A DNA stretch of 64,000 nucleotides from IMGVR_UViG_3300036770_003657:310001-374000; one strand, 5' to 3'. Shown: positions 11,747 through 33,649, numbered from the stretch's first letter. Notes: generated by a model not told the origin, from the sequence alone. Numbers and translations are program-made.

Positions 11747-11753
11747 ATTGTTT

Positions 11754-11828: not shown

Positions 11829-11833
11829 GTTGG

Positions 11834-11911
11834 TGGAGTTAGGAGTCGGATTCGAACCGACGGGTTGACAGTTTTGCAGACTGTTGCGTTGGGCCTCTCC
11901 GCCATCCTAAC
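11834..11911 (-). tRNA. trnC: tRNA-Cys(GCA)
   Basis: ACAGT-CTGCAAA-ACTGT, U73, CCA followed by a second CCA. Confidence 0.92.
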
Positions 11912-11914
11912 ATT

Positions 11915-11989
11915 TGGTACGGGCACTCGGGCTCGAACCGAGAACTTACTGGTTAAAAGCCAGTTACTCTACCTTTGAGTTATACCCGC
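11915..11989 (-). tRNA. trnK: tRNA-Lys(TTT)
   Basis: ACTGG-CTTTTAA-CCAGT, CCA. Confidence 0.93.
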
Positions 11990-12041
11990 AAAATAAAAAA
12001 CCCTTGGCAAAATCTATGACTTACCCAAAGGCCATAATTCT

Positions 12042-12116
12042 TGGTACACCCAACGGGAGTCGAACCCGTCTTTCCAGCTTGAAAGGCTAGCGTCCTAACC
12101 GATAGACGATGGGTGC
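12042..12116 (-). tRNA. trnE: tRNA-Glu(TTC)
   Basis: CTAGC-CTTTCAA-GCTGG, CCA. Confidence 0.93.
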
Positions 12117-12122
12117 TTTGTT

Positions 12123-12207
12123 TGGTGGAGAGCCAGGGACTCGAACCCCGTATGCCTGAGGCGTCGGATTTACAGTCCGATGCAGTAACCTGTTCTGCTC
12201 GCTCTCC
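12123..12207 (-). tRNA. trnY: tRNA-Tyr(GTA)
   Basis: TCGGA-CTGTAAA-TCCGA, variable arm, CCA. Confidence 0.93.
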
Positions 12208-12243
12208 GTATGTGTTTATAAATACTCCGAAGAGAACATCCCA

Positions 12244-12732
12244 CTAAATGTTCACATTTATGAATGGGTCTTCGTCCATTAATCCAATTGTTATTGCCTT
12301 TCTAACAGATGTTACATTTGCTACACTATGCAAAACATGCGTATTTAATATATGCCATCTGAAAGGTTCTATTTCTAATTTCATTATCGTTTCTAAATCA
12401 TCTATTGTCGGATGGCTGTATCTAGGACCAATATAAATATCTCTATTCTTGATACGATGCAGCCGTGTTACGACGTTTCCTCCTCTAGAAATAATATAGT
12501 TTAATCCCCAACGTCTGAAATCGCAGTGAGGAGCAACATTAGCTTCCATAACTTGACAGCCCATTCTGTCTTTTATAGGGCTAACATGTTTTACTAGCCA
12601 ATCTATAAGTTGTTCTGAAATGTTATATCTTGAGTAAACTCCATCTTTAAATCCTACTTTATCTGTGTAATAACAATCTACAAGAAGATTGGAGGGTATA
12701 TTAGGTAATTGATCCAAATAAGTAAAAAGCAT
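12244..12732 (-). CDS. Putative Fe(II)/2OG-oxygenase-like protein
   Basis: APHCD...WGLNYI...WHILNTHVLHSV...RKAIT; paralog of 1177-1761. Confidence 0.55.
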   Translation of the reverse strand: MLFTYLDQLPNIPSNLLVDCYYTDKVGFKDGVYSRYNISEQLIDWLVKHVSPIKDRMGCQVMEANVAPHCDFRRWGLNYIISRGGNVVTRLHRIKNRDIYIGPRYSHPTIDDLETIMKLEIEPFRWHILNTHVLHSVANVTSVRKAITIGLMDEDPFINVNI

Positions 12733-14842: not shown

Positions 14843-15655
14843 TTAAATTTTTTTATAAACAGCAATTACAGTATGCCCAATATCAAAGTTTATATTATGA
14901 TCTTTGATATCATATCTATTCTCATCAAGTAAACTACGATGAAAATCTGCTAGGGGTTCTTCGTATATTTCCACTTGTCTTAGGTCAAACAAGTTGGCAA
15001 TATTAGTCAAACATTGTTTGGTAAATCGTGTAACATGATGTGGAGGATAGTTTAGTGCCCAACCTTCTATATTGCCTAAAAAACCGTCTTCGTTTGGCAC
15101 ACTGAGTATGAGTATACCATTAACTTTTAAACAGCGTAGAGCATTGGATATAAAAGATCGTGTGTCATCTACATGTTCTAATACTTGGAATCCACATATT
15201 ACGTCATATAGGCCTTGATGTTCTTGTATGCTTTGTTTTATTACTTTCGGGTTTTGGCTGTAAGGATCTAGCCCAGTATAATCGGCTTCAACCATTTTAC
15301 CAAAGTAACCCTCTCCGCAGCCAATCTCCAGTATATTGTCATCTGATATGATGTATCTTTTGGCAAAGTCAAATTCTGGTTTGACCAATTGATAGTACCA
15401 AGGAAATGCCTGTAGTTGACTATAGAAGTTTGAACCACCCATAACAGGTGGTTTATAAAACCTAAGATCACAATCCATACATCTGTATAATTCTATATCA
15501 GAGGTAATATCTTCTGTGACATCAACTGGTGTATTATCAAACAAGGGATCTGTTTTATAAGCATTATGTATAAAATCACGGCTATACGTTTTATGTATAG
15601 CTGTGTTACTACTATGACATAAAGGACATTTTTTCATCTTTTTCCATATATTCAA
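14843..15655 (-). CDS. Class I SAM methyltransferase with N-terminal Zn-ribbon
   Basis: CPLC...CMDC, ILEIGCGEG, FQVLEHV, HHVTRF. Confidence 0.85.
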   Translation of the reverse strand: MNIWKKMKKCPLCHSSNTAIHKTYSRDFIHNAYKTDPLFDNTPVDVTEDITSDIELYRCMDCDLRFYKPPVMGGSNFYSQLQAFPWYYQLVKPEFDFAKRYIISDDNILEIGCGEGYFGKMVEADYTGLDPYSQNPKVIKQSIQEHQGLYDVICGFQVLEHVDDTRSFISNALRCLKVNGILILSVPNEDGFLGNIEGWALNYPPHHVTRFTKQCLTNIANLFDLRQVEIYEEPLADFHRSLLDENRYDIKDHNINFDIGHTVIAVYKKI

Positions 15656-16121
15656 AAAGGTTATTCCAGACTTCTTGTTTTTTCATTTCTTTAATTTCAT
15701 CGTCATATGGATGACTACCATCGAACCTATAGTGATAACGTAGAGCATCAGCACATACTATGTTCTTCTCTACAATATGTCTAAGATCTTCCCTACCACA
15801 GAGTAATCTTTCTCTACATAAGTCTACATTGTCCTGCATGAGATCAACTCCGTAAACTGTAGATAACGCCTGTTCAAAGGTTGAACCATTCTCCATCTTG
15901 CGGATTAAGACTTCGCCAAGGAACTGTCCATCACCGCAAGTAGGGTCCAGGAAAGTTTTGGTAGTATCAGTAAACACTTCTTCGGGTAATTGTGTTAGTA
16001 TTTCTTGAACAAGAGGAGTCGGGGTAAAGACTTCTCCCGTTGCCTTTACCCTTGCCTGTTCTCGCTCTACACCACTCATGTAATCACGGTCGCGGATGTG
16101 ATTGATTATGTCATTTAACAT
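15612..16121 (-). CDS. N6-adenine DNA methyltransferase-like small subunit
   Basis: RVKATGEVFTP (motif X), FLDPTCGDGQF (motif I), YGVDL; no NPPY. Start overlaps the upstream stop. Confidence 0.75.
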   Translation of the reverse strand: MLNDIINHIRDRDYMSGVEREQARVKATGEVFTPTPLVQEILTQLPEEVFTDTTKTFLDPTCGDGQFLGEVLIRKMENGSTFEQALSTVYGVDLMQDNVDLCRERLLCGREDLRHIVEKNIVCADALRYHYRFDGSHPYDDEIKEMKKQEVWNNLFEYMEKDEKMSFMS

Positions 16122-19100
16122 TGGCTTCAACATAATCGATTTCATCTTGAGTAAGGCCGAAGTGAGCATATAGTTCTGCGTCAGTCCAAACCTTACTAGC
16201 GAGTTTAGGCAATGATGACAACACTTTTCCATTAAGGAAACCGCTCCATTTACCTGTGTTTACGACAAATTTGTAAAGTTTGCTATTAAGATAACTTAGG
16301 ATATGTTGTGATTCTGCTGAGTTTGTTAAAATATATTGGCATACTTCTGAGGTTCCCAGATTGCCTTCACTATAGAAAGGTTTAAAATAACCACTTGTAG
16401 TCCAAATAATCTTAGACTTTAAAAAGTCTTTTGATTGTTTTTTACAAAATTTTGTTTGAGCATTGGTATGGAATGTTTCATACTTGTAAGTCGTGTCTTT
16501 AGTGTCAGAAAAATTCTTATGCTTATGGTCGCTATGGCACGATGTATCGCAAAGAATATCTAACTTGGGGTGAGTCGAGTTAATTACTTTATCATGTATA
16601 GGAAATGTTTTAGAAAAATTTCTCGGAAGATATTGAAGTCTAGCAAGGTCAACTTCTAGTCCGTCAATCAATGCCGTTGAGGTATTCTTATTTTTTTGCA
16701 TGATCCATGCTGTAAAACTACTACCAACCGTAAAATATTTTCCAACTTCAGTATCAACCCAAATCAGAGAGTTATCTTTAAACATTTTGAGGACTTGACT
16801 GTTTGGGCTCATCCAACTGTCAGGGGTAACAAATGCAATATACCCATCTGTGTTGAGTAGTTCAGATCCTTTGTCAACAAACTTACTCCACAAATTATGA
16901 CTCTTGGGTTGTTTTGTTCCCTTATCATTGTTACCTTGATAAGGAGGATTACCTACAATAACATCAAATTTCATATCAAACTCCAATTCTGTAAAGTCGC
17001 CTTGCATTACTGTGATGCCAGGATACTTGCGTTTAATCTGGTTGCAGAGAAAACTGTATTTGTCATTATACACAATCTTGTCTACAATAGCAACGCCAAA
17101 CATGTCCACAAGCACATCAATCTCCGATCCGTGACCACCTGCTACTACAAGGATCTGACGGCAATGCTTACTTTTGATAAAACGCTTTAGTTCTCTGTTA
17201 CCAAAAATATCAAACCAAAGTTTAAGATCATCTTTGAGAATGGCCAGGGCATTATTCTCAATGTGCTTTTGTTTATTATTATATTTACTCATCCGCACAA
17301 TCATGTCTAGCGTGGAAATCTCTAGACGACTAGCAAGACGCTTGATGGTGCCGGGATACACTCCGTAAAGTTCTGCAAACTCTCGGCTCATTTCTGCATT
17401 GACATCGATGATATCTACACACTCAAGGAAACTTTCACCTTGATAATTGCTCAGGGCCAACACAGTTGTGGCACTTCCGTTGATCATACGGATGGCTTTT
17501 TCTACGATCACCTTAAGAGGATTTTTTTTTGGTCGGCCCGATGCTGTATGACCTGAATCAAAAGTCTTGCCAGTGGCAACGACTTTGTCAATTTTAGATT
17601 TCTCTGCCTTACTTCCAGATGATCGTTTGGCCAATTCGCCAAAGGCTTCGATCTCTTCAGAAGTCAAATCCTCTAGAGTAATGCGAGTATGAGCATTGGC
17701 AATCTCCAACAGTTTATTGTTGTCTTCGAACTGCTTAATAACTTCGTCAGCATCAATCCATTGACCAGAAACCATGTCCTTGATGTTGACACTATTCAAC
17801 ACTTCTCGAACAGCGTCAGGATAGGTTTTTCCTTTTTGTCGAATCAACAGAGCCGCTTCTACTGCTACGCTCATCACAGTATTGCGAGTCTTACTTTGGT
17901 CAAAGGCAAAGTCAAAGATGTGACCAAACTTTTTGCCATAGCCGGGTGTAAGGCAACGACTGTATTTTTGCATGTAAGGATAGACATCGCCACCTTCTTG
18001 CATAAACAAGCAGGCCTGGATCTCAGGAATACTGTAACTGCGAGTGCCCATCATGTTGGTGATCACCAACAGTTTGTTGCGGCCTTCATAGTATCCGTTT
18101 TGCAAGCGGACCAGTTCTTCTTTGGTATCGCCTTCAGAATCTTTGTTGTTGGTGTGATCGCCGTGTAATACTTTTACCTTATGCTCGGGGCAGGCCTTTT
18201 CAATGACTTCGGCAAGTTGGTCCATTGCCAGTTTGGGAATATTAACAAACAGCATAGAATTTTGAATCTCTTCGCCGGCACAGTCACTTATGTTAAATCC
18301 ATAAATTGGCTGGTATCCAAAGATGTCCTGGAATAGTGCAGATATAAATTTCTGCTGGCTCAATGGCTTTGCTAGAATCTTTGTGATGTTAGGCAACAGA
18401 TCCTTATCAAAATCTTCCAGCAGTTTGTTGATGCGGCCGCTGAACAACATATTGTAGAATCTACGCACTACTACATTAGGAATACTTTTATCCTGTTCTA
18501 CCATGCAGTAAGGAACACTAATAATTTCATCGATGGCATTCTTGCCAAACGCCTTGGCTAGTCGACCGATGTTAGTTCCGCTGGCGTTGATTCGCGTTAC
18601 AGTCTTGTTTGCTAGAATGTATTCAACCTTTTCGACTTGACTGTCAGTGTGAGTGCCAAAGTCTGTTTCTTCTAGCAAGGCAATATGTGTGCCAGTAAGT
18701 TTGTTGATCCATTCGTATTTTTCTTCTGCTTCCGGATTCAGACTAACAAACACAACGGGCATCTTACCATCTGCGATAGCCTGTTGATATTGTTGTTCTG
18801 CGTCCGAATCGGCGGCATCAATAAACGTCATGCAAGCAAAATCAATATACTTGCCGATTTCATCTTTGTAAGAAGTCTTAACACTGAGCCCAACGCCGTA
18901 GGCCATAATAAACATCGACTCGTGCCCAAACTCTTCTCGCATGGTTTTTGCAAGGGACAGGAACAAGATAGTTTTACCAATTCGTGCCGCAAGTTCGCAT
19001 ACAAAATTAGTTACGATACCATTTTGGCGAAGAGCAGACAAAACTTTTTTAATAACTAGAATCTGAACTTCTCGCAAATTTGCAGCCTGCTTTACATGAT

Positions 19101-19545
19101 TAGGGTTGAGTTTTGCAGCACATCTGCGGATTTTCTCATTAAGCCAAACACGAATGGGCTCAAAATCTTTGGATTTTAGAAACTGTTTGACGAGCATTTC
19201 TTCTACAGCAATACGAAACACCTCATTCTTTTTGCCTGTGTTTGGGTCCTGTAGTTGAGCCGCAAAGGTTTGGCGGATTTCTTTATGCAGGCTGTAATCG
19301 CTATATCCTGGTGTAGGGATAGAGTCTAACAAGTAATGTTGCCATTTTAGATTTTTGGAACTTGTATGTCCTTCCATTCGACTTGCAATAGTGCTATGTT
19401 CAGCATCTTCGCGTGTCTGCCCTACACCAAATTCTAAAAAGCCAGTAGATAGCATAGCCTCAATTCGGGGTGCAGTAGTATCTATGTAAATTCCTTGGCA
19501 GTCCGTTTTAAGACCAAGTTCTACAGGACTTTTAACATAACTCAT
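16111..19545 (-). CDS. SF2-helicase / Eco57I-like DNA methyltransferase fusion (R-M-like enzyme)
   Basis: AARIGKT (Walker A-like), LLEETDFG, SGT, FDVIVGNPPYQ, FVTPDSW, C-terminal LYAHFGLTQDEIDYVE. Confidence 0.75.
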   Translation of the reverse strand: MSYVKSPVELGLKTDCQGIYIDTTAPRIEAMLSTGFLEFGVGQTREDAEHSTIASRMEGHTSSKNLKWQHYLLDSIPTPGYSDYSLHKEIRQTFAAQLQDPNTGKKNEVFRIAVEEMLVKQFLKSKDFEPIRVWLNEKIRRCAAKLNPNHVKQAANLREVQILVIKKVLSALRQNGIVTNFVCELAARIGKTILFLSLAKTMREEFGHESMFIMAYGVGLSVKTSYKDEIGKYIDFACMTFIDAADSDAEQQYQQAIADGKMPVVFVSLNPEAEEKYEWINKLTGTHIALLEETDFGTHTDSQVEKVEYILANKTVTRINASGTNIGRLAKAFGKNAIDEIISVPYCMVEQDKSIPNVVVRRFYNMLFSGRINKLLEDFDKDLLPNITKILAKPLSQQKFISALFQDIFGYQPIYGFNISDCAGEEIQNSMLFVNIPKLAMDQLAEVIEKACPEHKVKVLHGDHTNNKDSEGDTKEELVRLQNGYYEGRNKLLVITNMMGTRSYSIPEIQACLFMQEGGDVYPYMQKYSRCLTPGYGKKFGHIFDFAFDQSKTRNTVMSVAVEAALLIRQKGKTYPDAVREVLNSVNIKDMVSGQWIDADEVIKQFEDNNKLLEIANAHTRITLEDLTSEEIEAFGELAKRSSGSKAEKSKIDKVVATGKTFDSGHTASGRPKKNPLKVIVEKAIRMINGSATTVLALSNYQGESFLECVDIIDVNAEMSREFAELYGVYPGTIKRLASRLEISTLDMIVRMSKYNNKQKHIENNALAILKDDLKLWFDIFGNRELKRFIKSKHCRQILVVAGGHGSEIDVLVDMFGVAIVDKIVYNDKYSFLCNQIKRKYPGITVMQGDFTELEFDMKFDVIVGNPPYQGNNDKGTKQPKSHNLWSKFVDKGSELLNTDGYIAFVTPDSWMSPNSQVLKMFKDNSLIWVDTEVGKYFTVGSSFTAWIMQKNKNTSTALIDGLEVDLARLQYLPRNFSKTFPIHDKVINSTHPKLDILCDTSCHSDHKHKNFSDTKDTTYKYETFHTNAQTKFCKKQSKDFLKSKIIWTTSGYFKPFYSEGNLGTSEVCQYILTNSAESQHILSYLNSKLYKFVVNTGKWSGFLNGKVLSSLPKLASKVWTDAELYAHFGLTQDEIDYVEANVK

Positions 19546-19718
19546 TCTTCATCTCCAAAATCAGCGTTATCAATTTGCTCTTGCCAAAATGCACGAGCAT
19601 CCTTTTCGTTTTCAAAACTTTCCAAAACGTTCATACCACCCAAAGGATGAGGAAACCAAACTAACCAAATTTGGTCATCTTCATCATATGTACAATATAG
19701 TTCTACTGGATCTTCCAT
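19542..19718 (-). CDS. 58-aa highly acidic protein, leaderless, coupled to the R-M gene
   Basis: MEDPVELYC...DFGDEE*; TGA overlaps the ATG of 19545; TATAAT 6 nt upstream of ATG. Confidence 0.65.
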   Translation of the reverse strand: MEDPVELYCTYDEDDQIWLVWFPHPLGGMNVLESFENEKDARAFWQEQIDNADFGDEE

Positions 19719-19724
19719 GTTCGT

Positions 19725-19753
19725 ATTATAGTATAAGTCCTATATGTTGTCAA
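19725..19753 (-). promoter_or_regulatory. Consensus sigma70 promoter
   Basis: TTGACA-17-TATAAT. Confidence 0.85.
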
Positions 19754-19820
19754 GTGTTGCAATATTACTACACAATTTTTGATAAACTGTTTACAATTGT
19801 TTAACAATTTTCTTGACACA

Positions 19821-19849
19821 ATTATAGTAAATCTTGCTTTACATGTCAA
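19821..19849 (-). promoter_or_regulatory. Consensus sigma70 promoter
   Basis: TTGACA-17-TATAAT, inside inverted repeat TTCTTGACA...TGTCAAGAA. Confidence 0.8.
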
Positions 19850-19992
19850 GAATTTATATTACTCTTTGGCTGACAAAATTGTCTGCGTATAACCAATGTA
19901 GTTGCTTATGTGCGGTAGACTGCACTACAATAGTGCTACGATGTTTAACTTTTTTAATATATCTATACTGACGCATAGATAATACGGTTTAC

Positions 19993-20757
19993 GTGTCAAT
20001 TGGTGTAGATATATTGTTAAGTATTAGTACAACCAAGGAAATAGAAGTGAGTGATAAAACACAGTTTACCTATGTGATGAAATATTTTAATCCAGAAGAT
20101 TTTGAAACATTAGGATCTGCTATTAAAAGAGATCTTAACGGAGAAGTCGAAGTTTATAATGGTATCGAAGATTTATTTCCTTTACTTAGTAATCCTTTCT
20201 ATAATACTGACTATGTATTCATTGATATAGAAGGTTTTTATAGTGTAGGGCATAGTGATGTATTTGAATTAATACAGACATTAAACACCCTACTCAAATG
20301 TACAGTACATAAACAAACACCAAGTAGTAAACCAAAACAACGATCAACTAAAATTGTTGTTTTAGTTCAATCAACAACAGATCCCTGTCTCATCAAGGAA
20401 GTAATAAAAATACCTTCTATCTATGGTGTGTTGGCCAGAGTAGGTGATGGTATAAGTTATGAAAACGCTTTAGAAGATTGTAGGCAATTATTGGCTGGTA
20501 AATCCGGTCCTGGTAGGTTAGTGGTGAACCTACTTAAAAAACCTAAAGTTGTAGTTAAACCTATATCGTCGGAGATCGCAATGACTCCAAGACAAAAACA
20601 GATCATGGATCTTATCTGTAGCAAAGGTGCCAGCAATAAACACATTGCTCGCATATTGGCTATCAGTGAAAGTACTGTAAAATTACACGTGGGACATATT
20701 TTCAAAAAATATGGAGTGCGTAGTAGAACACAATTGGCAGTGTTCAATCGTAAGTAA
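19993..20757 (+). CDS. LuxR-family HTH regulator with degenerate receiver-like N-terminus
   Basis: MTPRQKQIMDL...SNKHIARIL.ISESTVKLHV..IFKK.GV.SR.Q. Confidence 0.85.
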   Translation: MSIGVDILLSISTTKEIEVSDKTQFTYVMKYFNPEDFETLGSAIKRDLNGEVEVYNGIEDLFPLLSNPFYNTDYVFIDIEGFYSVGHSDVFELIQTLNTLLKCTVHKQTPSSKPKQRSTKIVVLVQSTTDPCLIKEVIKIPSIYGVLARVGDGISYENALEDCRQLLAGKSGPGRLVVNLLKKPKVVVKPISSEIAMTPRQKQIMDLICSKGASNKHIARILAISESTVKLHVGHIFKKYGVRSRTQLAVFNRK

Positions 20758-20855
20758 AGAAGTATATTCAGTATCTTAGTATACCTTTTTAGCCATCTTA
20801 ACTCTTTAAGTACATATGAGAGGGCATGAGCCCTCCCATATATAGGAGATAAAAT

Positions 20856-21512
20856 ATGGCAGATATTTTTACAGGTACAGCGACTGGGTTTGTAAACAAC
20901 TATCCAGAAACTACCACAGCGGCACTAAGCGATATTCGCCTAGAGCAAATGAAGCAAAGCAGCGATGTGCTCGACGCTATAAAGGATGCTCGTCATGAAT
21001 TACTTGACAGCACAGGTAGTGGTACCGATCGTATCACTGACCGTGTCAATGCGTTAGATTCTAAAACCGGTGATCGCTTCTTTGATGTCGGTCGTGACAC
21101 ACAAGACATTCGTGCTCAGATTATTTCAGCACAACAGGCCATGGTTGCTGGATTCATGGGTGCATCAAAAGATGCTGAAATCAACGCACTAAAGACACAG
21201 GTTGAATTGGCCAAGCAGAGCACTTATCTCAGCGATAAGATTGATTCTGATGGTGAAAAGACTCGTGCTCTTGTAAACAGTTTGAAAGAGCAAGATTTAA
21301 ATCGTATGCTAATTGAGCGTAATACTCTATTATCAGAAGAGCGTTTTGGTCGTAGATATTGGAGTCATGGGGCTGATCAAGGTCAATGGGCTGCATTGAA
21401 TAGCCAGTTACAGGCTTTCCAAAGTCAACTACAGGAAACTCGCCAAGGTATGGTTAACTTCGGTACTATGGCAGGAGTAGGACAGACATCGACCAGCAAT
21501 AATGTAAGATAA
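20856..21512 (+). CDS. Hypothetical helical/coiled-coil protein
   Basis: Strong SD AGGAG; 218 aa. Confidence 0.7.
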   Translation: MADIFTGTATGFVNNYPETTTAALSDIRLEQMKQSSDVLDAIKDARHELLDSTGSGTDRITDRVNALDSKTGDRFFDVGRDTQDIRAQIISAQQAMVAGFMGASKDAEINALKTQVELAKQSTYLSDKIDSDGEKTRALVNSLKEQDLNRMLIERNTLLSEERFGRRYWSHGADQGQWAALNSQLQAFQSQLQETRQGMVNFGTMAGVGQTSTSNNVR

Positions 21513-21548
21513 TCTTACCTTATCTGTTCCTTATTGTCTGTAGTTGGG

Positions 21549-21571
21549 GTGGGCCGTTATGGCCCACTTTT
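21549..21571 (+). terminator. Intrinsic terminator
   Basis: GTGGGCC-GTTAT-GGCCCAC-TTTT. Confidence 0.65.
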
Positions 21572-21582
21572 ATGGAGTCATT

Positions 21583-22281
21583 ATGGATACGCATCACAGA
21601 AAACTTATAGAATTAAATCAAGCATTACTCAAATTACACTATGGTGAAAAAATATCTGACGACCTGTTACAGCAGGCTCAATATGCTATAGCAGGAGGTA
21701 TTGATACTGGTCCAGGTAATGATACTGTAATAATAAATCAAGGAGCGAATAATGGAACACAATGCGTCCAAGGAATCCAAGGTACCCAAGGACTTCAAGG
21801 TATTGGAGGAGATGCACAAGGTATTCAAGGAATCCAAGGACTTCAAGGCACCGATGGAGCACAGGGCGCCCAGGGTATCCAAGGTATACAAGGACCTGGA
21901 GGAGAGAGTGGCACGCCTGGAAGCCAAGGCCTTCAAGGACTCGATGGCCCTGTCGGACCTATTGGCCCGCCTGGAAAATGTACTTGTGAGTGCAAGGCAA
22001 TTTTGGTATCAGAAGACTACAGTGCTGACAGTACTGATTACTATATTGGCGTTAATAGTGATGGACCGACTGTTATTGAACTTCCCTGTGATGTTAGAGA
22101 TTGTCTCGAAATTATTGTAAAAGCAGAAATGGGACCACCTTTAGGTAATCGTAAGATAACAATCATTCCCTGTCAAGACAGCACAGCCTGTAAGATAGAT
22201 GGAGAGGATAGTTATGTTATTGAAGTACCTTACCAATCAGTGAATTTAATCTACCGTGGTGGAAATTGGTGGATTGTTTAG
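21583..22281 (+). CDS. Collagen-like (G-X-Y) protein with C-terminal beta domain
   Basis: QGIQGTQGLQG...GPVGPIGPPGKCTCEC; SD GGAG before ATG 21583. Confidence 0.85.
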   Translation: MDTHHRKLIELNQALLKLHYGEKISDDLLQQAQYAIAGGIDTGPGNDTVIINQGANNGTQCVQGIQGTQGLQGIGGDAQGIQGIQGLQGTDGAQGAQGIQGIQGPGGESGTPGSQGLQGLDGPVGPIGPPGKCTCECKAILVSEDYSADSTDYYIGVNSDGPTVIELPCDVRDCLEIIVKAEMGPPLGNRKITIIPCQDSTACKIDGEDSYVIEVPYQSVNLIYRGGNWWIV

Positions 22282-22289
22282 GAGCGAAT

Positions 22290-22481
22290 ATGTATTATAG
22301 AGATTACCGTAGACCGTATCATAGAGACTATTATTATAGGCCGTATTATAGGCCCTATTATGATTGGATGCTGTATGATGCCTACAGAGATAGGGATTAT
22401 TATAGAGACAAATACTTGGACGAACTATACAAAGTAAATCCATGTGATTACAGTGACCTACTATGTAGGTATAGAAGATAA
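22290..22481 (+). CDS. Tyr/Arg/Asp-rich small protein
   Basis: MYYRDYRRPYHRDYYYRPYYRPYYD...; SD AGGAG. Confidence 0.7.
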   Translation: MYYRDYRRPYHRDYYYRPYYRPYYDWMLYDAYRDRDYYRDKYLDELYKVNPCDYSDLLCRYRR

Positions 22482-22491
22482 AGGATGAATT

Positions 22492-23025
22492 ATGATCAGT
22501 ACAATAACTTTTAGAAATAATGTAAACAATTTTTGGTATAACTGGTGTGACTGGATAGAGGATTATACTAGCCTAACCGGTACTAGCAGTGATACCAGTG
22601 AGTTATATTGGAAAATTACAAGAAGCATACAGGATTTTTATGATCCAGTTAAATCAGCCTATGGAAAAATGGCAGCAGAAAATGTTTGCCGGTACCTACT
22701 AGGAATGTTTGAAGGGCTAGTTCAGGCCAAAACATTAATTGAGAATAACGTAGATCCACAGGTAATAACAGACAGAGTGGCACCTAATGTAGTAGGTGGG
22801 TTAGTTACCACCTTAAGTAGTCTTAATTCAGATTGGACCAGTGAAGTACTAACTCCTGTGTTTGTCAATATTTGGACTGCTTGGCTGGAGCATTGTACTG
22901 CTACACTGGCCAGTGATATGACAGCAGCAGATGCCGCTGAATCTAAGGCACTAATTAATTCATTAGCATTTGCCGATGCATTTGTTAATGGAACAATAAA
23001 ACAGTACAACCCAATCTTTTTTTAA
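22492..23025 (+). CDS. Hypothetical helical protein
   Basis: 177-aa ORF, SD AAGGA. Confidence 0.65.
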   Translation: MISTITFRNNVNNFWYNWCDWIEDYTSLTGTSSDTSELYWKITRSIQDFYDPVKSAYGKMAAENVCRYLLGMFEGLVQAKTLIENNVDPQVITDRVAPNVVGGLVTTLSSLNSDWTSEVLTPVFVNIWTAWLEHCTATLASDMTAADAAESKALINSLAFADAFVNGTIKQYNPIFF

Positions 23026-23038
23026 TAAGGAAATAAAA

Positions 23039-23158
23039 ATGTCAAATGAATGTGATCCAATTAGCCCACCACCCCCACCAACTCCAGTGTGTGAACCCCC
23101 ACCTCCGCCACCAGAGGAAACACCACCAGTTCCAGAACCTACCCCACAACCCAATTAA
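23039..23158 (+). CDS. 39-aa Pro-rich peptide
   Basis: MSNECDPISPPPPPTPVCEPPPPPPEETPPVPEPTPQPN*; SD AAGGA. Confidence 0.65.
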   Translation: MSNECDPISPPPPPTPVCEPPPPPPEETPPVPEPTPQPN

Positions 23159-23175
23159 ATTTTTAAGGAGCGAAG

Positions 23176-23805
23176 ATGAGTTATTTGAGCGAAGGCACTA
23201 GTAAAACCGACTACGGCGTAGTTAAAGTTGGTAATTTTATTAATGTAGATGAAGGTATAGTTAGCTTAGAACAGGATGTTAGTCCTAATGCTGATGTTAT
23301 TTTTAATAAAGTTGAAAGTATAGAAGTATACGATAGTGATGATCGTGTTGTTACTAGTGTTACTCTTAGCAGTGGTGACAATGGTATTGAAATTAACAGC
23401 AGTGTAACCACAGGGCCAACTACAAGTTTTACCATAAACAATACTGGTGTTAGAAGATTAACAGCAGGTCCTGGCATAGACCTAAGTGATAGTTCTGGTG
23501 AAATTGTAGTCAGTGCCACAGGTGCTGATCTGATCAGTGTATATGGTACAACCACAAGTTATACCGCTACAGCAGATGATGAATATATAGGTGTTAGTAG
23601 TGCCAGTGCTGTAACAATCACTCTACCTAATGCGGATCCAGGTAGAGTGTATTACATTAAAGATGAATATGGACAAGGCAGTGGAAAAATTACAATCCAA
23701 CCACAAGTTGGTACACTTATTGATAGGAAAAATAATTATATAATTAGTGTTCCTCATCAAAGTGTAGCCGTTGTGTATAGAGCAGGAGGTTGGTGGTTAA
23801 TCTAA
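23176..23805 (+). CDS. Structural protein sharing its C-terminal domain with the collagen-like gene
   Basis: DDEYIGV...TITLP...IKDE.G...ITI...ID....I.VP.QSV..VYR.G.WW. Confidence 0.7.
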   Translation: MSYLSEGTSKTDYGVVKVGNFINVDEGIVSLEQDVSPNADVIFNKVESIEVYDSDDRVVTSVTLSSGDNGIEINSSVTTGPTTSFTINNTGVRRLTAGPGIDLSDSSGEIVVSATGADLISVYGTTTSYTATADDEYIGVSSASAVTITLPNADPGRVYYIKDEYGQGSGKITIQPQVGTLIDRKNNYIISVPHQSVAVVYRAGGWWLI

Positions 23806-24323
23806 ACCGCTTTACGTTCAGCGTCTTTGATAGCCAACCAAAGAAGGTCTTCAACCAATTGATTGAGGGTGACATCACGTTCGTGTGCCATCTTCATCAA
23901 TTGGAAGACTTCCTCATCACTGAGTTCTAATGGTACACTAACTTTATTGTCATAGTCCTCATTGGCCACAATCTTACGACTCTTTTCCAACCAATCTTCT
24001 TCTACTTCCAAATCAGTGTAGTCAATACCGTCCCAAGCCTGATTCATATAGTGTGAATTATGCTCACGAGCATAATCAAAATAAGCGGCCTTGTAGTGGG
24101 GATTGACTAAACGATAGGCACGCTCACGTTTATAGTCACAACTTTCTACCATATAGACTTCTTGGGTTAGGGTATCAAAAGTAATGTTCAAACTCCAACC
24201 ATCGGTCTCTCCATTCCAGGCACTGATCGAGTAGGCTCTGTCTCCAAAACAAGGCCAACCAAAATCACTACCTTCAGTGATACGATATTGACTTACTTCC
24301 ATAAATTGTTTAATAGTGATCAT
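23802..24323 (-). CDS. Conserved hypothetical phage protein
   Basis: MITIKQFMEV..YRITEGSDFGW.CFG; own promoter. Confidence 0.7.
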   Translation of the reverse strand: MITIKQFMEVSQYRITEGSDFGWPCFGDRAYSISAWNGETDGWSLNITFDTLTQEVYMVESCDYKRERAYRLVNPHYKAAYFDYAREHNSHYMNQAWDGIDYTDLEVEEDWLEKSRKIVANEDYDNKVSVPLELSDEEVFQLMKMAHERDVTLNQLVEDLLWLAIKDAERKAV

Positions 24324-24406: not shown

Positions 24407-25282
24407 TTAGAAACGATGTACTAGACCAATACCAAATTGGCTTTGATCTGCTGCATTTACCTTGCTGTCTACATTACGATATGCTACTACTAAGTCAGTA
24501 CGCTTGCTCAAATGATAGTCTGCACCAATAGCGTATGCGTCTACATCACGATTGGTACGACCATAACTGGCCTTTAATGTTACTGGACCACTGGTACGTG
24601 CAACACCAACTAGATCACCTTTATGTGCATAAGCACCCTTGTTATCACTATGGCTGTAGGTCACACTAAATCCAGCAACTTTAGTGGCTGCTGTCAATAC
24701 TGTGCTTTCCTCACTGCCTGCATCATAACGTGCTACTGCTGCCTGTACGGGACCAACACGACCACTGCCACTAACTACAGTGATTTCCTGTGCTAGGCCT
24801 TGTGTTTGAGTTAGCCCAAGGTTAATACCTTTAACTGGGGTAACTGTTAGATGTACGGCATCACTGACACGTAGTCCACGTAGGTTGTGAACATCACCAA
24901 CTAGTGAACCATATACTGCACCGAATACATCACTGTCTGCGATAGTATTGAATAAGCCGTGTGTGGCACGACCAAGGCTAACACCAGCAAAGTTATTGGC
25001 TACACCAACAGTCATTTGACGATCTCCTAGGCGTGTGCCTGGTGTACCAAATGTGTTGTCGCCAATGCTGGTTTCTACAACTGCTGTAGCAGTTAAGGCA
25101 CCAACCTTTTCTTTGGCTGTAATGTTAAGATTGTTTGTGGGCTCTGTTGCTGCGGCAGTAGTTGAACGTGATCCAACTTCTACGTTTTGTACATATGCAC
25201 CAACTTTACCACCTAATGTTACCTGTGCTTGTGCTGCACCGGCAACGGCCATCAACGCTACTGCAAGAATAGTTTTCTTCAT
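24407..25282 (-). CDS. Gram-negative outer-membrane porin (Burkholderiales type)
   Basis: Signal peptide MKKTILAVAL..AQAQVTL, YHLSKRT, C-terminal GLVHRF. Confidence 0.88.
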   Translation of the reverse strand: MKKTILAVALMAVAGAAQAQVTLGGKVGAYVQNVEVGSRSTTAAATEPTNNLNITAKEKVGALTATAVVETSIGDNTFGTPGTRLGDRQMTVGVANNFAGVSLGRATHGLFNTIADSDVFGAVYGSLVGDVHNLRGLRVSDAVHLTVTPVKGINLGLTQTQGLAQEITVVSGSGRVGPVQAAVARYDAGSEESTVLTAATKVAGFSVTYSHSDNKGAYAHKGDLVGVARTSGPVTLKASYGRTNRDVDAYAIGADYHLSKRTDLVVAYRNVDSKVNAADQSQFGIGLVHRF

Positions 25283-26321: not shown

Positions 26322-26939
26322 CTAGTTTATTAGGCTATTCTTAATATCTTCAACGGTCCACAACGCCATACTCTTATCGTATGCGTCGCCCACTAAACCC
26401 TCATTTATAATGAATAATGGCTTAGGCAAGTTAAATGGCTCCGCCTCAAGATTCAATGCTCGCCACTTTCCCATTTCTATATCATTATTATTTACATGGT
26501 CTGGGAATGTGGTCATCAATACGTATTTACAATCGCTAAGACATATATTGTATAGGCTTTTGAATACTAGATCATTGGGGAAATGTACTAAACAATCCCT
26601 TATTAATACTAGGTCAGCATATGGTAGTTCACTATCTATTAAGTCTAATTCAATGAATTCTTTTTCTGGATATTTTATACGATTGTCCTTAATAATCTCA
26701 GTGACTAAATCGGCTCCAGTATAATCTATACCTGCAAGGTCAACAATCTTCATCCAATTAAAATCACCGCATGGTATATCCAATACACTGGTAATATTAA
26801 ATTGTTTGAAAAGTACAGGTAGTTGATCGGCCAGTTTACGTGTTTTTACTATGCTAGATCCTGTACCGCTACGACTTTCCTGATCACGCCAATAATTTGT
26901 ATTGTAGATATCTAAAAATATATCTGTATAATTCTTCAT
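26322..26939 (-). CDS. Class I SAM-dependent methyltransferase
   Basis: SRSGTGSS, VLDIPCGDFNW, YTGADL, RDCLVHF. Confidence 0.85.
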   Translation of the reverse strand: MKNYTDIFLDIYNTNYWRDQESRSGTGSSIVKTRKLADQLPVLFKQFNITSVLDIPCGDFNWMKIVDLAGIDYTGADLVTEIIKDNRIKYPEKEFIELDLIDSELPYADLVLIRDCLVHFPNDLVFKSLYNICLSDCKYVLMTTFPDHVNNNDIEMGKWRALNLEAEPFNLPKPLFIINEGLVGDAYDKSMALWTVEDIKNSLIN

Positions 26940-29686: not shown

Positions 29687-30370
29687 TTACCTTAACTCTG
29701 GAAACAAACACTCCTGTATGAATATACGTACATCTTCCTCATTCAATCCCAAACTGGTCATTACCTTAGGCGTATGTGGGTTCATCTTTTGGTTCTGTGC
29801 GTAAAAATTCTGTTGTTCGCTAGTATTAAGTACAGTGTTATTAGTTTCACCTACTGTGCTTAAGTAATGATCTACACCCTTGCGAGCCATTTCAAAGATT
29901 TGATCTAGTTCGTGTTCGTCCTGTACATTACCTGCTGCCACCATGCTCTTGCTGAATATACGGGTAGCCCAATCTGGTAGTGCTCTTTCCTTACGCCATT
30001 CCATCTTACTTACTTCGTTGGCAAACCATTCACACATAGGATGATTAGCATCCCCTGTAGGACTATAATCATAAAAACAGCCGGTAATTTTATTCTTACC
30101 GGCTATAACATCAAATCCAAAGATTGGGGCAGGGTTGTGTGTATGTGGAAATACGCAACAATGCATCATCCACAATCCCTTTTTCTCTCTAGCATCTACA
30201 ACATCTACGTGAGCCCTACGATATGCTTCACTGGTCCAAACACGGTTTACCCATCCTGGTTGATTAAACCTATCCATACCTGGTTCAAATGCTTCAGTAC
30301 CAGTGCGTTCAAAACTTTGCTCTAATAGGTGTTGTACATTAATTAGAGCGTCCCAAACTTTACTCTCCAT
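29687..30370 (-). CDS. Ferredoxin-dependent bilin reductase (PcyA/PcyX-like)
   Basis: RRAHVDVVD...LWMMHCCVFP...PIFGFDVIAG.NKITG.F.D.SP. Confidence 0.88.
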   Translation of the reverse strand: MESKVWDALINVQHLLEQSFERTGTEAFEPGMDRFNQPGWVNRVWTSEAYRRAHVDVVDAREKKGLWMMHCCVFPHTHNPAPIFGFDVIAGKNKITGCFYDYSPTGDANHPMCEWFANEVSKMEWRKERALPDWATRIFSKSMVAAGNVQDEHELDQIFEMARKGVDHYLSTVGETNNTVLNTSEQQNFYAQNQKMNPHTPKVMTSLGLNEEDVRIFIQECLFPELR

Positions 30371-31771: not shown

Positions 31772-33649
31772 TTAGGCTGCGTTTTTAACTTCTGTAAAAT
31801 CTACATCCGTAATGTCCTTATCCTGTTGTTGAGGCTGTGCGTTTTTAGCAGTGTAAATAACCTGTGCCGCAGCAGCTAGGTCACTCATCTTCTGTGTTAT
31901 TGATTCCTTAGTACCTGTAGCAATCTCAGTTAATAGTGCTGTGATACTAGTTTCAATCTTATCTTTATCATCACTGCTAATCTTATCCTCAACTTCCTTC
32001 AAATCCTTACGAATTTGATGGACTTGTCCGTCTACGCTATTCCTTAAATCAACAATCTCACGCTGTTTGCGATCTTCCTCAGCGTTGGCTTCAGCTTCAC
32101 GGATCATTTTTTCAATTTGATCCTTACTTAAACCACCATCTGATTTAATAGTGATCTTGTTTTCTTTGCCTGTAGTCTTATCCTTGGCACTAATTTTCAT
32201 AATACCATTAGCATCTACATCAAAGGTTACTTCAATTTGAGGCATACCTCTGGGCTGTGGCATAATACCTTCTAGGTTAAACTCGCCTAGTAGTTTATTA
32301 TCCTTTACAAACTCACGTTCACCTTGGAATACCTTAATAGTGACAGCAGGTTGATTGTCATCTGCTGTGCTAAATGTTTGACTAGCCTTTGTGGGAATAG
32401 TAGTATTCTTTTGAATGATCTTGGTCATTACTCCACCAAGTGTTTCAATACCAAGACTCAATGGTGTAACATCTAATAACAATACGTCATTGCGTTCGCC
32501 GCTTAGTACAGCACCTTGTACAGCAGCACCCACTGCCACTGCTTCATCTGGGTTAACATCCTTACGTGGCGCTTTACCAAATAACTTTTCTACAGCGTCC
32601 TGTACCTTGGGCATACGTGTCATACCACCAACTAAAATAATTTCATCAATATCTGCTGGTGTAACTCCTGCGTCTTTCATAGCAGTACGACAGGGAGCAA
32701 TGCTACGTTCAATTAAATCTTCAACCAATGCTTCTAATTTAGCACGAGTAAGTTTTAGATTCATATGTTTTGGCCCGCTAGCATCAGCAGTAACATATGG
32801 TAGATTAATATCTGTTTGTTGGCTGCTACTTAATTCAATTTTAGCCTTTTCCGCTGCCTCTTTAAGACGTTGTAGAGCTAATACATCTTTAGTCAAGTCA
32901 ATACCTTGATCCATCTTAAAAGTATCAACTAAGTAATCCATAATACGTTGGTCGAAGTCTTCACCACCTAAGAAAGTATCACCATTAGTGCTTAGTACTT
33001 CAATTTGTTTGTCATTACCCAAGTTAGCAATTTCAATAATGCTAATATCAAAAGTGCCACCGCCCAAGTCATATACTGCTACCTTACGATCTTTTTTATC
33101 CGTCTTATCAACGCCGTAAGCCAACGCGGCAGCAGTCGGTTCATTAATGATGCGAAGAACTTCCAAGCCAGCAATACGGCCAGCATCTTTAGTAGCTTGA
33201 CGCTGACTATCATTAAAATAGGCCGGAACAGTAATAACAGCTTGGGTAACATCATAACCTAAATAATCTTCAGCAGTCTTTTTCATTTTACGCAATACTT
33301 CTGCGCTGATTTGAGGAGGTGCTAACTCCTTGCCCTGTGCCTTAACCCAAGCATCACCACTTGAGTTTTCAATGATTTCATAGGGCATTAGATCTAAATC
33401 TTTTTGTACAGCCTCTTCTTTAAACTTACGTCCAATTAAGCGTTTGGCTGCGTATACTGTATTCTTTGGATTAGTAACAGCTTGTCTTTTAGCACTGGCA
33501 CCTACAAGAATTTCTTCATCTGTATAGGCTACTATACTGGGAGTAGTACGTGCTCCTTCGCTGTTTTCAATTACTTTGGGATTGCCGCCTTCTATAATGG
33601 CGACGCAACTGTTAGTAGTACCGAGATCGATACCGATTACCTTACTCAT
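31772..33649 (-). CDS. dnaK: Chaperone DnaK (Hsp70)
   Basis: [43 protein letters not shown]. Confidence 0.98.

What the first reader, a model, noticed from the sequence alone, without database searches (positions are those of the whole stretch)
19993..23805. LuxR-headed plus-strand cluster of collagen, Tyr-rich, Pro-rich and coiled-coil proteins (spore-coat/exosporium-like composition)
Seen: an island on the opposite strand from most genes, with strong SDs: LuxR HTH, helical protein, G-X-Y collagen with CTCEC, a YYRDY-rich 63-aa protein, a helical protein, a polyproline/Cys peptide and a structural gene. Established: BclA-type collagens and Tyr-rich coat proteins build cross-linked spore surfaces. 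Inference: a regulated module assembling an extra coat/fibre layer on virions or host cells. The function is not known to me.
Basis: partly seen in the sequence, partly recalled or inferred. Interest (0 to 1): 0.6.

Follow-up and report, generated by a model that had tools for sequence, protein, structure and literature searches.

The report
LuxR-headed fibre operon of a jumbo phage
This is a real, widely conserved gene cassette of an uncultivated freshwater T4-like giant phage: a LuxR-type regulator followed by three fibrous proteins (a coiled coil, a collagen fibre and a short beta-helical fibre, the last two ending in the same phage-type knob), so it most likely builds fibres on the virus particle and not a spore-coat-like layer.

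Summary
All seven plus-strand ORFs exist as described, in a 399,796-bp T4-like (Gp23 capsid) virus genome. The conserved core is ORF1 (NarL/CsgD-like LuxR regulator with a degenerate receiver), ORF2 (about 200-residue coiled coil with an invariant disordered tail), ORF3 (collagen, C-x-C-x-C motif, knob) and ORF7 (short beta-rich fibre with a paralogous knob). The knob adopts the XD1 fold of CBA120 TSP4 and T4 gp9/gp10 (Z 11.4, rmsd 2.0 A). It also resembles the Pa223 capsid-spike knob. ORF2 and ORF7 each have more than 1,000 metagenomic homologues. The order ORF2-ORF3-ORF7 holds in nearly all 48 related viral loci. ORF4, ORF5 and ORF6 fill a variable slot that in relatives usually holds a Tyr-rich mini-protein. 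LuxR-bearing loci carry a TAAGTA hexamer, an upstream AAGTA box and a 5' hairpin. Half of the LuxR-less loci examined (some from cyanophage-like contigs) carry the T4 late promoter TATAAATA instead. A hairpin with a T-run always separates ORF2 from ORF3. Contigs from RNA libraries are deeper over ORF2. The best reading is a virion fibre operon with one abundant and two rarer components. No homology links it to spore-coat or exosporium proteins. It is a new variant of a known kind; where the fibres sit and what they bind are unproven.

The parts
19719..19992 (.). Divergent intergenic control region between the minus-strand methyltransferase operon and ORF1
   Evidence: Two perfect sigma-70 consensus promoters (TTGACA-17-TATAAT, 12/12) lie on the minus strand at 19849-19821 and 19753-19725. 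A weaker plus-strand match (10/12) lies at 19801-19828 and faces ORF1. These are consensus matches only; function is not shown.
19993..20757 (+). ORF1: LuxR/FixJ-family regulator, 254 aa, with a C-terminal GerE HTH and an N-terminal receiver-like domain of degenerate type
   Evidence: PF00196 matches at E 1.4e-16 over residues 197-251. A profile of 14 orthologues aligns to NarL residues 64-210 at E 2.8e-21 and to VraR and VpsT. The best NCBIfam partial hit is CsgD at 1.4e-15, far below its cut-off. The column where this protein has its candidate acidic residue is not conserved among orthologues, whereas the HTH is nearly invariant. It is the only GerE gene in the genome.
20758..20855 (+). Promoter/leader region of ORF2: AGTAT repeats 20761-20783, TAAGTA hexamer 20807-20812, 5' hairpin 20814-20841, Shine-Dalgarno site 20844-20849
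   Evidence: A TAAGTA hexamer followed by a hairpin recurs in 13 of 14 LuxR-bearing relatives; the closing pairs of the hairpin stems co-vary. AAGT[AC] sits 47-48 nt upstream of the hexamer in 8 of 12 loci, and a related box sits about 10 nt further upstream in 3-4 others. TRF reports AGTATATTC x2.7 at 20761-20783. Contigs from RNA libraries begin at 20825-20832. The extended motif occurs once on this strand in the window.
20856..21512 (+). ORF2: 218-aa extended coiled-coil protein with an invariant disordered C-terminal tail; probably the abundant component
   Evidence: It has 1,100 homologues at 52-100% identity. AF2 models helices 18-101 and 104-206, with the tail 205-218 disordered. Only generic coiled-coil fold matches were found, Z 7.3 or less. 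The N-terminal half varies by indels and the C-terminal half is conserved. Contig depth in four RNA libraries is highest here.
21549..21573 (+). Terminator-like hairpin (7-bp GC-rich stem, 5-nt loop) and T-run between ORF2 and ORF3
   Evidence: The sequence is. A GC-rich hairpin, mostly followed by a T-run, occupies this position in all 20 loci examined, and the stem sequences are unrelated to each other. RNA-library contig depth drops after ORF2 in 3 of 4 runs.
21583..22281 (+). ORF3: 232-aa collagen-like fibre made of an N-terminal helix, 22 G-X-Y triplets, a C-x-C-x-C motif and a C-terminal XD1-type knob
   Evidence: Pfam Collagen is hit above its cut-off and PHROG tail-fibre families are hit through the collagen part. 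The knob is 39% identical to the ORF7 knob at E 2e-13. Orthologues share this architecture, with variable collagen length and a conserved Cys motif.
22290..22481 (+). ORF4: 63-aa Tyr/Arg/Asp-rich mini-protein in the variable slot
   Evidence: Its composition is. It is 71% identical in L042. Tyr-rich or Tyr/Trp-rich small ORFs occupy the same slot in at least 10 relatives.
22492..23025 (+). ORF5: 177-aa lineage-specific helical-bundle protein in the variable slot
   Evidence: Only 7 homologues were found, at 43-67% identity. It is 42% identical in L042, where the flanking genes are 71-89% identical. The ESM Atlas model has pTM 0.84 and resembles four-helix sensor bundles at TM about 0.5, which is not diagnostic.
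23039..23158 (+). ORF6: 39-aa Pro-rich (49%) peptide with 2 Cys; unverified gene
   Evidence: It has a Shine-Dalgarno site and an ATG. It has no homologue and is absent from L042. Similar Pro-rich stretches end the Tyr/Trp-rich proteins of L011. An RNA-library contig spans it with no mismatch (X16 record 13).
23176..23805 (+). ORF7: 209-aa short fibre with a conserved N-terminus, beta-strand repeats whose copy number varies among homologues, and a C-terminal XD1-type knob
   Evidence: It has 1,033 homologues, nearly all 208-209 aa and 58-99% identical. Some homologues carry an extra 25-residue repeat unit. In the AF2 model residues 128-209 have pLDDT about 90. Fold matches: CBA120 TSP4 82-175 (Z 11.4, rmsd 2.0, 88 aa), Solidus gp83 (Z 10.1), KP1 baseplate (Z 9.9), Pa223 capsid-spike knob (Z 9.2), CpaA (Z 8.1) and StcE (Z 7.0). 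BFVD gives 222 viral matches at E 0.001 or better, including Gp9/Gp10, collagen and tail-fibre proteins.

Best explanation
The locus is a self-contained fibre operon of an uncultivated freshwater T4-like jumbo phage. Shown: ORF3 and ORF7 are fibre-type proteins (a collagen triple helix and a beta-strand-repeat shaft). Both end in paralogous knobs of the XD1 beta-sandwich fold found in T4 gp9/gp10, CBA120 TSP4 and the Pa223 capsid spike. ORF2 is an extended coiled coil. The three genes keep their order and are co-conserved in many phage contigs. Inferred: the products assemble in the cytoplasm as homotrimers and are mounted on the virion. Capsid and tail are both possible locations. ORF2 would be the abundant component, and the two knobbed fibres would be rarer because a leaky terminator follows ORF2. 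The near-invariant knobs point outward or dock a conserved partner; candidates are a common glycan (the same fold binds glycans in StcE and CpaA) or the invariant ORF2 tail. ORF1, a NarL/CsgD-like regulator whose receiver no longer looks phosphorylatable, is made from an early-type promoter. It then activates the single TAAGTA promoter in front of ORF2 through the upstream AAGTA boxes. In this clade that promoter replaces the T4 late promoter (TATAAATA) that several LuxR-less relatives have at the same place. ORF4, ORF5 and ORF6 are lineage-specific accessory proteins in a fast-changing slot, and their role is unknown.
For: The knob fold matches several solved phage structures well above background, and its meaning is taken from PMC8825819 and bioRxiv 10.1101/2025.06.11.659172. 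BFVD and ESM Atlas neighbours are almost all phage fibre, baseplate or collagen proteins. The knob profile finds 7,807 representative proteins; the sampled hits are mostly 150-250-aa proteins with a collagen or beta-repeat shaft ending in the knob, and some carry the domain in tandem arrays. The genome has a T4 Gp23 capsid gene. The order ORF2-ORF3-ORF7 holds in nearly all of the 48 loci that reach far enough. A LuxR gene lies directly upstream in 17 of 29 loci with enough sequence. LuxR-bearing loci have TAAGTA in 13 of 14 cases and TATAAATA in 0 of 14. LuxR-less loci have TAAGTA in 0 of 8 and TATAAATA in 4 of 8. The AAGTA box is positioned consistently. The leader hairpin and the post-ORF2 terminator are conserved as structures, not as sequences. 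TATAAATA occurs in front of several other genes in the window but not in the cluster. Contigs from four aquatic RNA libraries (three studies) cover the cluster, start at 20825-20832, and are 4-10 times deeper over ORF2 than over ORF1 or ORF7. No leader peptide or membrane segment is present.
Against: There are no virion proteomics or imaging for any phage that carries the module, and GenBank phages hold no ORF2 or ORF7 relative. The neighbourhood is non-structural: methyltransferases, a porin, a bilin reductase, Hsp70 and ribonucleotide reductase. The ORF2 fold is a generic coiled coil, so it could equally be a chaperone or a scaffold. Near-invariant knobs are unusual for receptor-binding tips. 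The RNA evidence comes from assembled contigs. The LuxR-promoter link rests on co-occurrence across related loci, not on binding data. Most relatives have a papain-like peptidase just after ORF7, which this genome lacks and which the model does not explain.
Confidence: 0.55

Rival explanations
1. Tail or baseplate host-recognition module. On this reading ORF3 and ORF7 are accessory tail fibres or baseplate-attached receptor-binding proteins, and ORF2 is their connector. This is narrower than the best explanation because it fixes the location (tail) and the role (primary host recognition).
For: The best fold matches are to baseplate and tailspike anchor regions: T4 gp9/gp10, CBA120 TSP4 and the KP1 baseplate. 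The collagen part hits PHROG tail-fibre families.
Against: The knob is C-terminal and nearly invariant over more than 1,000 homologues from many habitats, whereas receptor-binding tips usually diversify. In solved phage proteins XD1 acts as an internal spacer, not a tip (PMC8825819). The only solved protein with the same order of parts (N-terminal anchor, beta-helix, C-terminal knob) is a capsid spike. No baseplate genes lie nearby.
Confidence: 0.2
2. ORF2 is not a structural fibre. It is an abundant coiled-coil assembly chaperone or scaffold, comparable in role to T4 gp57A, that folds the two trimeric knobbed fibres and is not itself in the particle.
For: It has a generic coiled-coil fold, strict co-occurrence with the two fibre genes and apparently higher expression. 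Loci with two ORF2 paralogues also have extra knob genes (L013 and L028).
Against: At 218 aa with an indel-variable N-terminal half, it looks more like a fibre shaft than a compact chaperone. It lies upstream of the fibre genes, not downstream as most fibre chaperones do (background knowledge). Its invariant tail is shared with Tyr-rich mini-proteins in relatives, which fits a docking peptide better than a chaperone.
Confidence: 0.15
3. The module works inside or on the infected cell and not on the virion. Examples would be a coiled-coil scaffold with adaptor proteins, or a spore-coat/exosporium-like cross-linked layer.
For: The composition (collagen, a 30%-Tyr peptide, a Pro/Cys peptide) resembles cross-linked surface layers. 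The genes sit among host-takeover and auxiliary genes and next to a phage-encoded porin. They have a dedicated regulator instead of a late promoter.
Against: There are no export signals, no homology to BclA or Cot families, and no cross-linking enzymes were seen nearby. The knob fold is typical of phage virion proteins. LuxR-less relatives place a T4 late promoter, which in T4 typically drives virion genes, in front of the same operon. The Tyr-rich and Pro-rich genes are not conserved core members.
Confidence: 0.1

Closest known systems
XD1 domain of T4 gp9/gp10 and CBA120 TSP4 (PDB 7REJ, 1QEX, 5IV5)
   Same: The beta-sandwich fold is the same: ORF7 residues 120-209 align to TSP4 82-175 at Z 11.4, rmsd 2.0 A, over 88 residues. 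It occurs in trimeric phage fibre or spike proteins.
   Different: Here the domain is the C-terminal end of small (about 210-230 aa) proteins, not an internal spacer near an N-terminal anchor. Sequence identity is about 17%, and there is no Pfam hit to T4_gp9_10_N. The paralogous pair follows a collagen shaft in one gene and a beta-repeat shaft in the other.
Pseudomonas phage Pa223 capsid spike gp52 (PDB 9NY6)
   Same: The order of parts matches ORF7: a short N-terminal attachment segment, a beta-helical shaft and a C-terminal knob. It is the top Foldseek hit, and the knob scores Z 9.2.
   Different: The sequences are unrelated (16% identity) and the host phage is a small podovirus. The gp52 shaft is a wide triple beta-helix, while the ORF7 shaft is modelled with low confidence. 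The function of gp52 is itself unproven.
Bacterial and viral collagen-like surface fibres (BclA, Scl1/Scl2, Lcl; PRD1 P5)
   Same: ORF3 shares a G-X-Y triple-helix shaft capped by a globular trimerising C-terminal domain. Partial NCBIfam hits to Lcl and Scl come through the collagen part only.
   Different: It has no exosporium-targeting N-terminus, no LPXTG motif and no signal peptide. The cap has the phage XD1 fold. All scores are far below the family cut-offs.
CsgD / VpsT / NarL class of LuxR-family regulators
   Same: They share a receiver-like N-domain plus a GerE HTH. Like CsgD with the curli genes, ORF1 sits beside and probably controls a fibre operon.
   Different: ORF1 is phage-encoded. 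Its acidic acceptor position is not conserved among orthologues. It scores far below the equivalog cut-offs (57.6 against 250 bits). It has no autoinducer-binding domain. DNA binding has not been tested.
T4 fibritin (wac)
   Same: Both are long alpha-helical coiled coils ending in a short, conserved, non-helical C-terminal element, in a T4-type phage.
   Different: There is no sequence or profile similarity. In ORF2 the conserved end is C-terminal and the N-terminal half is variable, and its oligomeric state is unknown.

Membership tests
LuxR/FixJ (GerE) HTH regulators | C-terminal four-helix GerE-type HTH domain scoring above the Pfam gathering threshold | tested here: met
   PF00196 scores 60.3 bits against a 23.5 cut-off over residues 197-251. 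The NarL DNA-binding domain matches at E 8e-10.
NarL/FixJ two-component response regulators | Receiver domain with a conserved phospho-acceptor Asp | tested here: inconclusive
   The orthologue profile aligns to NarL from residue 64 to 210, so the second half of a receiver fold is present. No acidic column is conserved in the N-domain across the 14 orthologues. No structure model of ORF1 was made.
Quorum-sensing LuxR receptors (AHL-binding) | N-terminal autoinducer-binding domain (PF03472) | tested here: not met
   No such hit at E up to 1. LasR, RhlR and SdiA match only through the HTH.
Collagen triple-helix proteins | Uninterrupted G-X-Y repeats scoring above the Pfam Collagen threshold | tested here: met
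   PF01391 scores 35.4 bits against 27.2. There are 18 uninterrupted triplets plus 4 more.
BclA-type exosporium collagens and spore-coat Tyr-rich proteins | Sequence membership in the BclA/BclB C-terminal domain, exosporium-targeting N-terminus or Cot families | tested here: not met
   No such family appears in Pfam, NCBIfam or PHROGs for ORF3, ORF4 or ORF7. The globular domain matches phage XD1 domains. One BFVD neighbour is labelled 'BclB C-terminal domain-containing' (rank 50), which is only a lead.
T4 gp9/gp10-like XD1 domain | Nine-stranded mixed beta-sandwich superposable on TSP4 XD1 or gp9 | tested here: met
   Z 11.4, rmsd 2.0 A, 88 residues on 7REJ. 1QEX and 5IV5 are also listed by Foldseek with probability 1.00. 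This rests on a predicted model with pLDDT about 90 in this part.
T4 gp9/gp10-like XD1 domain | Sequence membership (Pfam T4_gp9_10_N) and a baseplate location | tested here: not met
   There is no Pfam hit. Location cannot be tested here.
T4 late genes | TATAAATA late promoter shortly upstream | tested here: not met
   There is none in 19540-23900. It is present 63-246 nt upstream of the ORF2 homologue in 4 of 8 LuxR-less relatives.

The most novel reading that the evidence does not exclude
The fibres are an optional virion ornament. The phage-encoded pseudo-receiver LuxR protein would sense a host or environmental cue and so decide, infection by infection, whether progeny particles are dressed with adhesive fibres. 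That would be a regulated, condition-dependent virion phenotype, achieved by replacing the constitutive T4 late promoter with an activator-dependent one.
Probability: 0.12. Interest if true: 0.75.

Novelty: new variant of a known kind. Interest (0 to 1): 0.45.

Why it matters
The cassette is among the better-conserved unknown gene sets of a large group of uncultivated freshwater T4-like phages, with more than 1,000 homologues each for ORF2 and ORF7. That group includes 230-510-kb contigs and cyanophage-like contigs. If the products are virion fibres with near-invariant knobs, they point to a common adhesion target or a conserved docking system on these particles. The apparent swap of a T4 late promoter for a promoter paired with a dedicated LuxR-type regulator would be a clear, testable case of a phage placing a structural operon under its own transcription factor. 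The small size of the proteins makes expression, structure determination and binding assays straightforward.

Tried and rejected
- A complex-prediction run of the ORF7 knob (residues 100-209, three copies) with the ORF2 tail (residues 160-218, three copies) returned 'no answer' (score 0.00). It counts neither for nor against binding.
- tblastn of ORF7 and ORF2 against 50,697 GenBank phage records found no match. blastn of the whole cluster found only a 100-nt collagen-repeat match.
- ORF5 has no relative in IMG/VR by pattern scan, only 7 homologues overall and no diagnostic fold.
- ORF2 gave no Foldseek PDB match, only generic coiled coils by VIA and nothing named in the ESM Atlas.
- A scan of bacterial genomes with the porin found no relatives, so no host could be inferred.
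- A scan of bacterial genomes with the ORF7 profile found only distant knob domains in six MAGs.
- Literature searches for jumbo phages with collagen-like or LuxR genes found nothing relevant.
- Unpositioned k-mer enrichment in the promoter regions was not significant, and the composite AAGTA/TAAGTA pattern is not rare by chance genome-wide. The evidence is its fixed position across loci.
- A c-di-GMP (VpsT-type) motif in ORF1 was considered. The YWPKH motif conserved in some orthologues is absent from this ORF1 and does not match the VpsT motif as I recall it, so the idea was dropped.
- Only genetic code 11 was used.

Full report
WHAT IS THERE. The window is bases 310,001-374,000 of a single-contig, 399,796-bp IMG/VR virus record that CheckV rates as complete. 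The genome encodes a T4-type major capsid protein (Pfam Gp23, E 1e-98), so it is a T4-like jumbo phage. DNA runs that hold the cluster are mostly labelled freshwater or aquatic metagenomes. Nearly every other long ORF in the window is on the - strand. GC skew is positive only in 20-24 kb. Refined coordinates:
- ORF1: 19993-20757.
- ORF2: 20856-21512.
- ORF3: 21583-22281. The upstream TTG at 21544 lies inside a hairpin, and a GGAG site precedes ATG 21583.
- ORF4: 22290-22481, 63 aa.
- ORF5: 22492-23025.
- ORF6: 23039-23158.
- ORF7: 23176-23805.

Shine-Dalgarno sites and gaps of 8-17 nt link ORF3 to ORF7. None of the seven proteins has a hydrophobic leader or membrane segment.

THE TWO KNOBBED FIBRES. 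The last ~85 residues of ORF3 and ORF7 are paralogous (39% identity, E 2e-13). An AlphaFold2 model of ORF7, built on 34 homologues, is confident only in this part (pLDDT about 90). That part superposes on the following:
- the XD1 domain of CBA120 tailspike 4 (Z 11.4, rmsd 2.0 A, 88 residues);
- Acinetobacter phage Solidus gp83 (Z 10.1);
- a Klebsiella phage KP1 baseplate protein (Z 9.9);
- the C-terminal knob of the Pa223 capsid spike (Z 9.2);
- at lower scores, the glycan-binding modules of CpaA and StcE.

Foldseek also lists T4 gp9 and gp10. PMC8825819 describes XD1 as a nine-stranded sandwich shared by gp9, gp10, TSP4, CpaA and StcE. [quoted passage not shown] ORF7 appears to follow the same order: a conserved N-terminus, then beta-strand repeats whose number varies among homologues, then the knob.

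ORF3 has an N-terminal helix, 22 G-X-Y triplets, a conserved C-x-C-x-C motif and then the knob. A profile of the knob finds 7,807 representative proteins. The sampled hits are mostly 150-250-aa proteins with a collagen or beta-repeat shaft ending in the knob, and some carry the domain in tandem arrays. BFVD and ESM Atlas neighbours are almost all phage proteins, annotated as Gp9/Gp10, collagen repeat or tail fibre. I therefore regard 'trimeric phage fibre proteins with an XD1-type knob' as well supported, at about 0.85. Trimerisation itself is inferred from the collagen shaft and from the solved relatives.

ORF2. This protein has 1,100 homologues. Its N-terminal half varies by insertions and deletions. 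Residues 80-218 are strongly conserved, and the last ~20 residues are nearly invariant. The model is two long helices with a disordered tail. Fold searches return only generic coiled coils. In several relatives, the Tyr-rich mini-protein encoded between ORF3 and ORF7 ends in a ~30-residue segment significantly similar to the ORF2 tail (0 of 2,000 shuffles reach the score). This suggests a shared docking or co-assembly element. The window's own ORF4 lacks it.

CONSERVATION AND SYNTENY. ORF7 has 1,033 homologues, nearly all 208-209 aa and 58-99% identical. In the 48 IMG/VR loci recovered with the ORF7 profile, and in three long metagenome contigs (up to 512 kb), the order ORF2-ORF3-ORF7 is kept wherever the contig reaches far enough. 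The space between ORF3 and ORF7 is variable. It holds Tyr-rich or Tyr/Trp-rich small proteins, sometimes with Pro-rich ends, sometimes a 148-156-aa helical protein, and once an extra fibre-like gene. ORF4 and ORF5 are found only in the closest relative, L042, at 71% and 42% identity, where flanking genes are 71-89% identical. ORF5 has just 7 homologues. ORF6 has none.

About 30 of the 48 loci carry a papain-like cysteine peptidase shortly downstream of ORF7, directly adjacent in many (Pfam Peptidase_C1 on the L006 copy). This genome has no such gene. Here ORF7 instead abuts a convergent 192-aa gene and a porin gene. Relative to L006, the cassette is inverted with respect to the conserved 303-aa and methyltransferase genes. 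The genome contains no other knob gene of this type.

REGULATION. ORF1 is the only GerE-type gene in the genome. A profile of 14 orthologues aligns to NarL residues 64-210 (E 2.8e-21) and to VraR and VpsT. The best NCBIfam partial match is CsgD, far below its cut-off. The HTH is nearly invariant among orthologues, but the N-domain has no conserved acidic acceptor column. I therefore read it as a pseudo-receiver regulator.

A LuxR gene lies directly upstream of ORF2 in 17 of 29 loci with at least 1.5 kb of upstream sequence. In those loci the ORF2 leader has a conserved layout:
- an AAGT[AC] box 47-48 nt (or about 57 nt) upstream of a TAAGTA hexamer;
- 2-5 nt after the hexamer, a hairpin whose closing pairs co-vary;
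- a Shine-Dalgarno site.

LuxR-bearing loci have TAAGTA in 13 of 14 cases and TATAAATA in 0 of 14. LuxR-less loci have TAAGTA in 0 of 8, and 4 of 8 have the T4 late-promoter octamer TATAAATA within 250 nt. One LuxR-less locus, L016, also carries psbA and a 6-phosphogluconate dehydrogenase gene, so it comes from a cyanophage-like genome. In this window TATAAATA lies in front of several minus-strand genes but nowhere in the cluster. The inference, not yet shown by any binding data, is that in this clade an activator-dependent promoter replaced a late promoter. In T4, late promoters typically drive virion genes, which indirectly supports a virion role.

A GC-rich hairpin, mostly followed by a T-run, lies between ORF2 and ORF3 in all 20 loci examined, with unrelated stem sequences. 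This fits a leaky terminator that sets a high ratio of ORF2 to ORF3-7.

RNA LIBRARIES. Contigs from four aquatic metatranscriptome runs (three studies), 90-100% like the window, cover ORF1 to ORF4 and ORF7. Contigs covering ORF2 begin at 20825-20832. In one run a sequencing adapter directly precedes 20832, about 15-20 nt after the TAAGTA hexamer. Single-contig depths are 17-68 over ORF2, against 3-12 over ORF1 and 2-8 over ORF7. Depth falls after ORF2 in three of the four runs.

Three caveats come from the tool. These are assembled contigs. Depths add up related phages. DNA carry-over was not excluded. I use this evidence only as consistent with expression and with ORF2 being the abundant product.

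WHAT IT MOST LIKELY IS. The locus is a virion fibre operon with its own regulator (see Best explanation, confidence 0.55). The location on the particle and the ligand are open. The main rivals are a tail receptor-binding module, ORF2 as a chaperone, and a non-virion or coat-like structure. The spore-coat analogy rests on composition only. No coat or exosporium family is hit, there are no export signals, and the Tyr-rich and Pro-rich genes are not core members.

COMPARISON WITH KNOWN SYSTEMS AND NOVELTY. Each component belongs to a known kind: a LuxR/NarL-type regulator, a collagen-like fibre, an XD1 knob and a coiled coil. Four things appear not to have been described:
- the cassette as a unit;
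- the C-terminal use of XD1 on two small paralogous fibres;
- the tail shared between the coiled coil and the Tyr-rich proteins;
- the pairing of LuxR with a non-late promoter.

No GenBank phage record matched ORF2 or ORF7, and no relevant paper was found. I rate it a new variant of a known kind, with interest 0.45.

Noticed in passing
G000 contig C1 about 128,850-146,430 (+), outside the window; also 52,140-52,680 (-): One open frame of 6,003 aa consists largely of collagen G-X-Y repeats (dozens of Pfam Collagen hits). A separate 365-aa collagen protein lies near 52 kb. This phage therefore encodes at least three collagen-like proteins, one of them giant.
   Followed up: no
Relatives L006, L011, L016, L033, L036, L037, L043 and others, shortly downstream of the ORF7 homologue: About 30 of the 48 related loci carry a ~250-aa papain-like cysteine peptidase (Pfam Peptidase_C1 on the L006 copy) shortly downstream of ORF7, in both LuxR-bearing and LuxR-less clades. 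The window's genome has none. Its role in the module is unknown.
   Followed up: partly
Relatives L015, L018, L027, L033, L039, L052 (slot between ORF3 and ORF7): The Tyr-rich 60-84-aa proteins in this slot end in a ~30-residue segment similar to the invariant ORF2 C-terminal tail (0 of 2,000 shuffles reach the score). The window's ORF4 lacks this tail.
   Followed up: partly
window 24407-25282 (-): A phage-encoded Gram-negative porin (Pfam Porin_4, E 5e-22, with what looks by eye like a signal peptide) is 72-89% identical in the closest relatives. No close bacterial relative was found.
   Followed up: partly
window 31772-33649 (-): A full-length Hsp70/DnaK homologue is encoded by the phage (Pfam HSP70, E 1.7e-260).
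   Followed up: no
window 29687-30370 (-): A ferredoxin-dependent bilin reductase homologue is present (Pfam Fe_bilin_red, E 1.2e-15; PHROG auxiliary metabolic gene class).
   Followed up: no
window 44502-56831 (-): A 4,109-aa open reading frame is present. It was not analysed.
   Followed up: no
window 16111-19545 (-) and 19725-19849 (-): A 1,144-aa protein carries an Eco57I-type N6-adenine methyltransferase domain in its C-terminal third. It is preceded by two perfect sigma-70 consensus promoters. Further methyltransferase genes lie at 14843-16232 and 26322-26939.
   Followed up: no
Locus L016 (IMGVR_UViG_3300044609_000595), 9481-12715: This LuxR-less relative carries psbA (photosystem II D1) and a 6-phosphogluconate dehydrogenase gene a few kb from the fibre cassette. 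The cassette therefore also occurs in cyanophage-like T4-type genomes.
   Followed up: no
window 22492-23025 (+) compared with L042 1063-1593: ORF5 is only 42% identical in the closest relative, where the flanking genes are 71-89% identical. It is the fastest-evolving gene of the cassette.
   Followed up: partly
Loci L003 and L014: Two tandem LuxR-type genes precede the cassette in these relatives. The upstream copy in L003 is a 400-429-aa protein with a long N-terminal extension.
   Followed up: no
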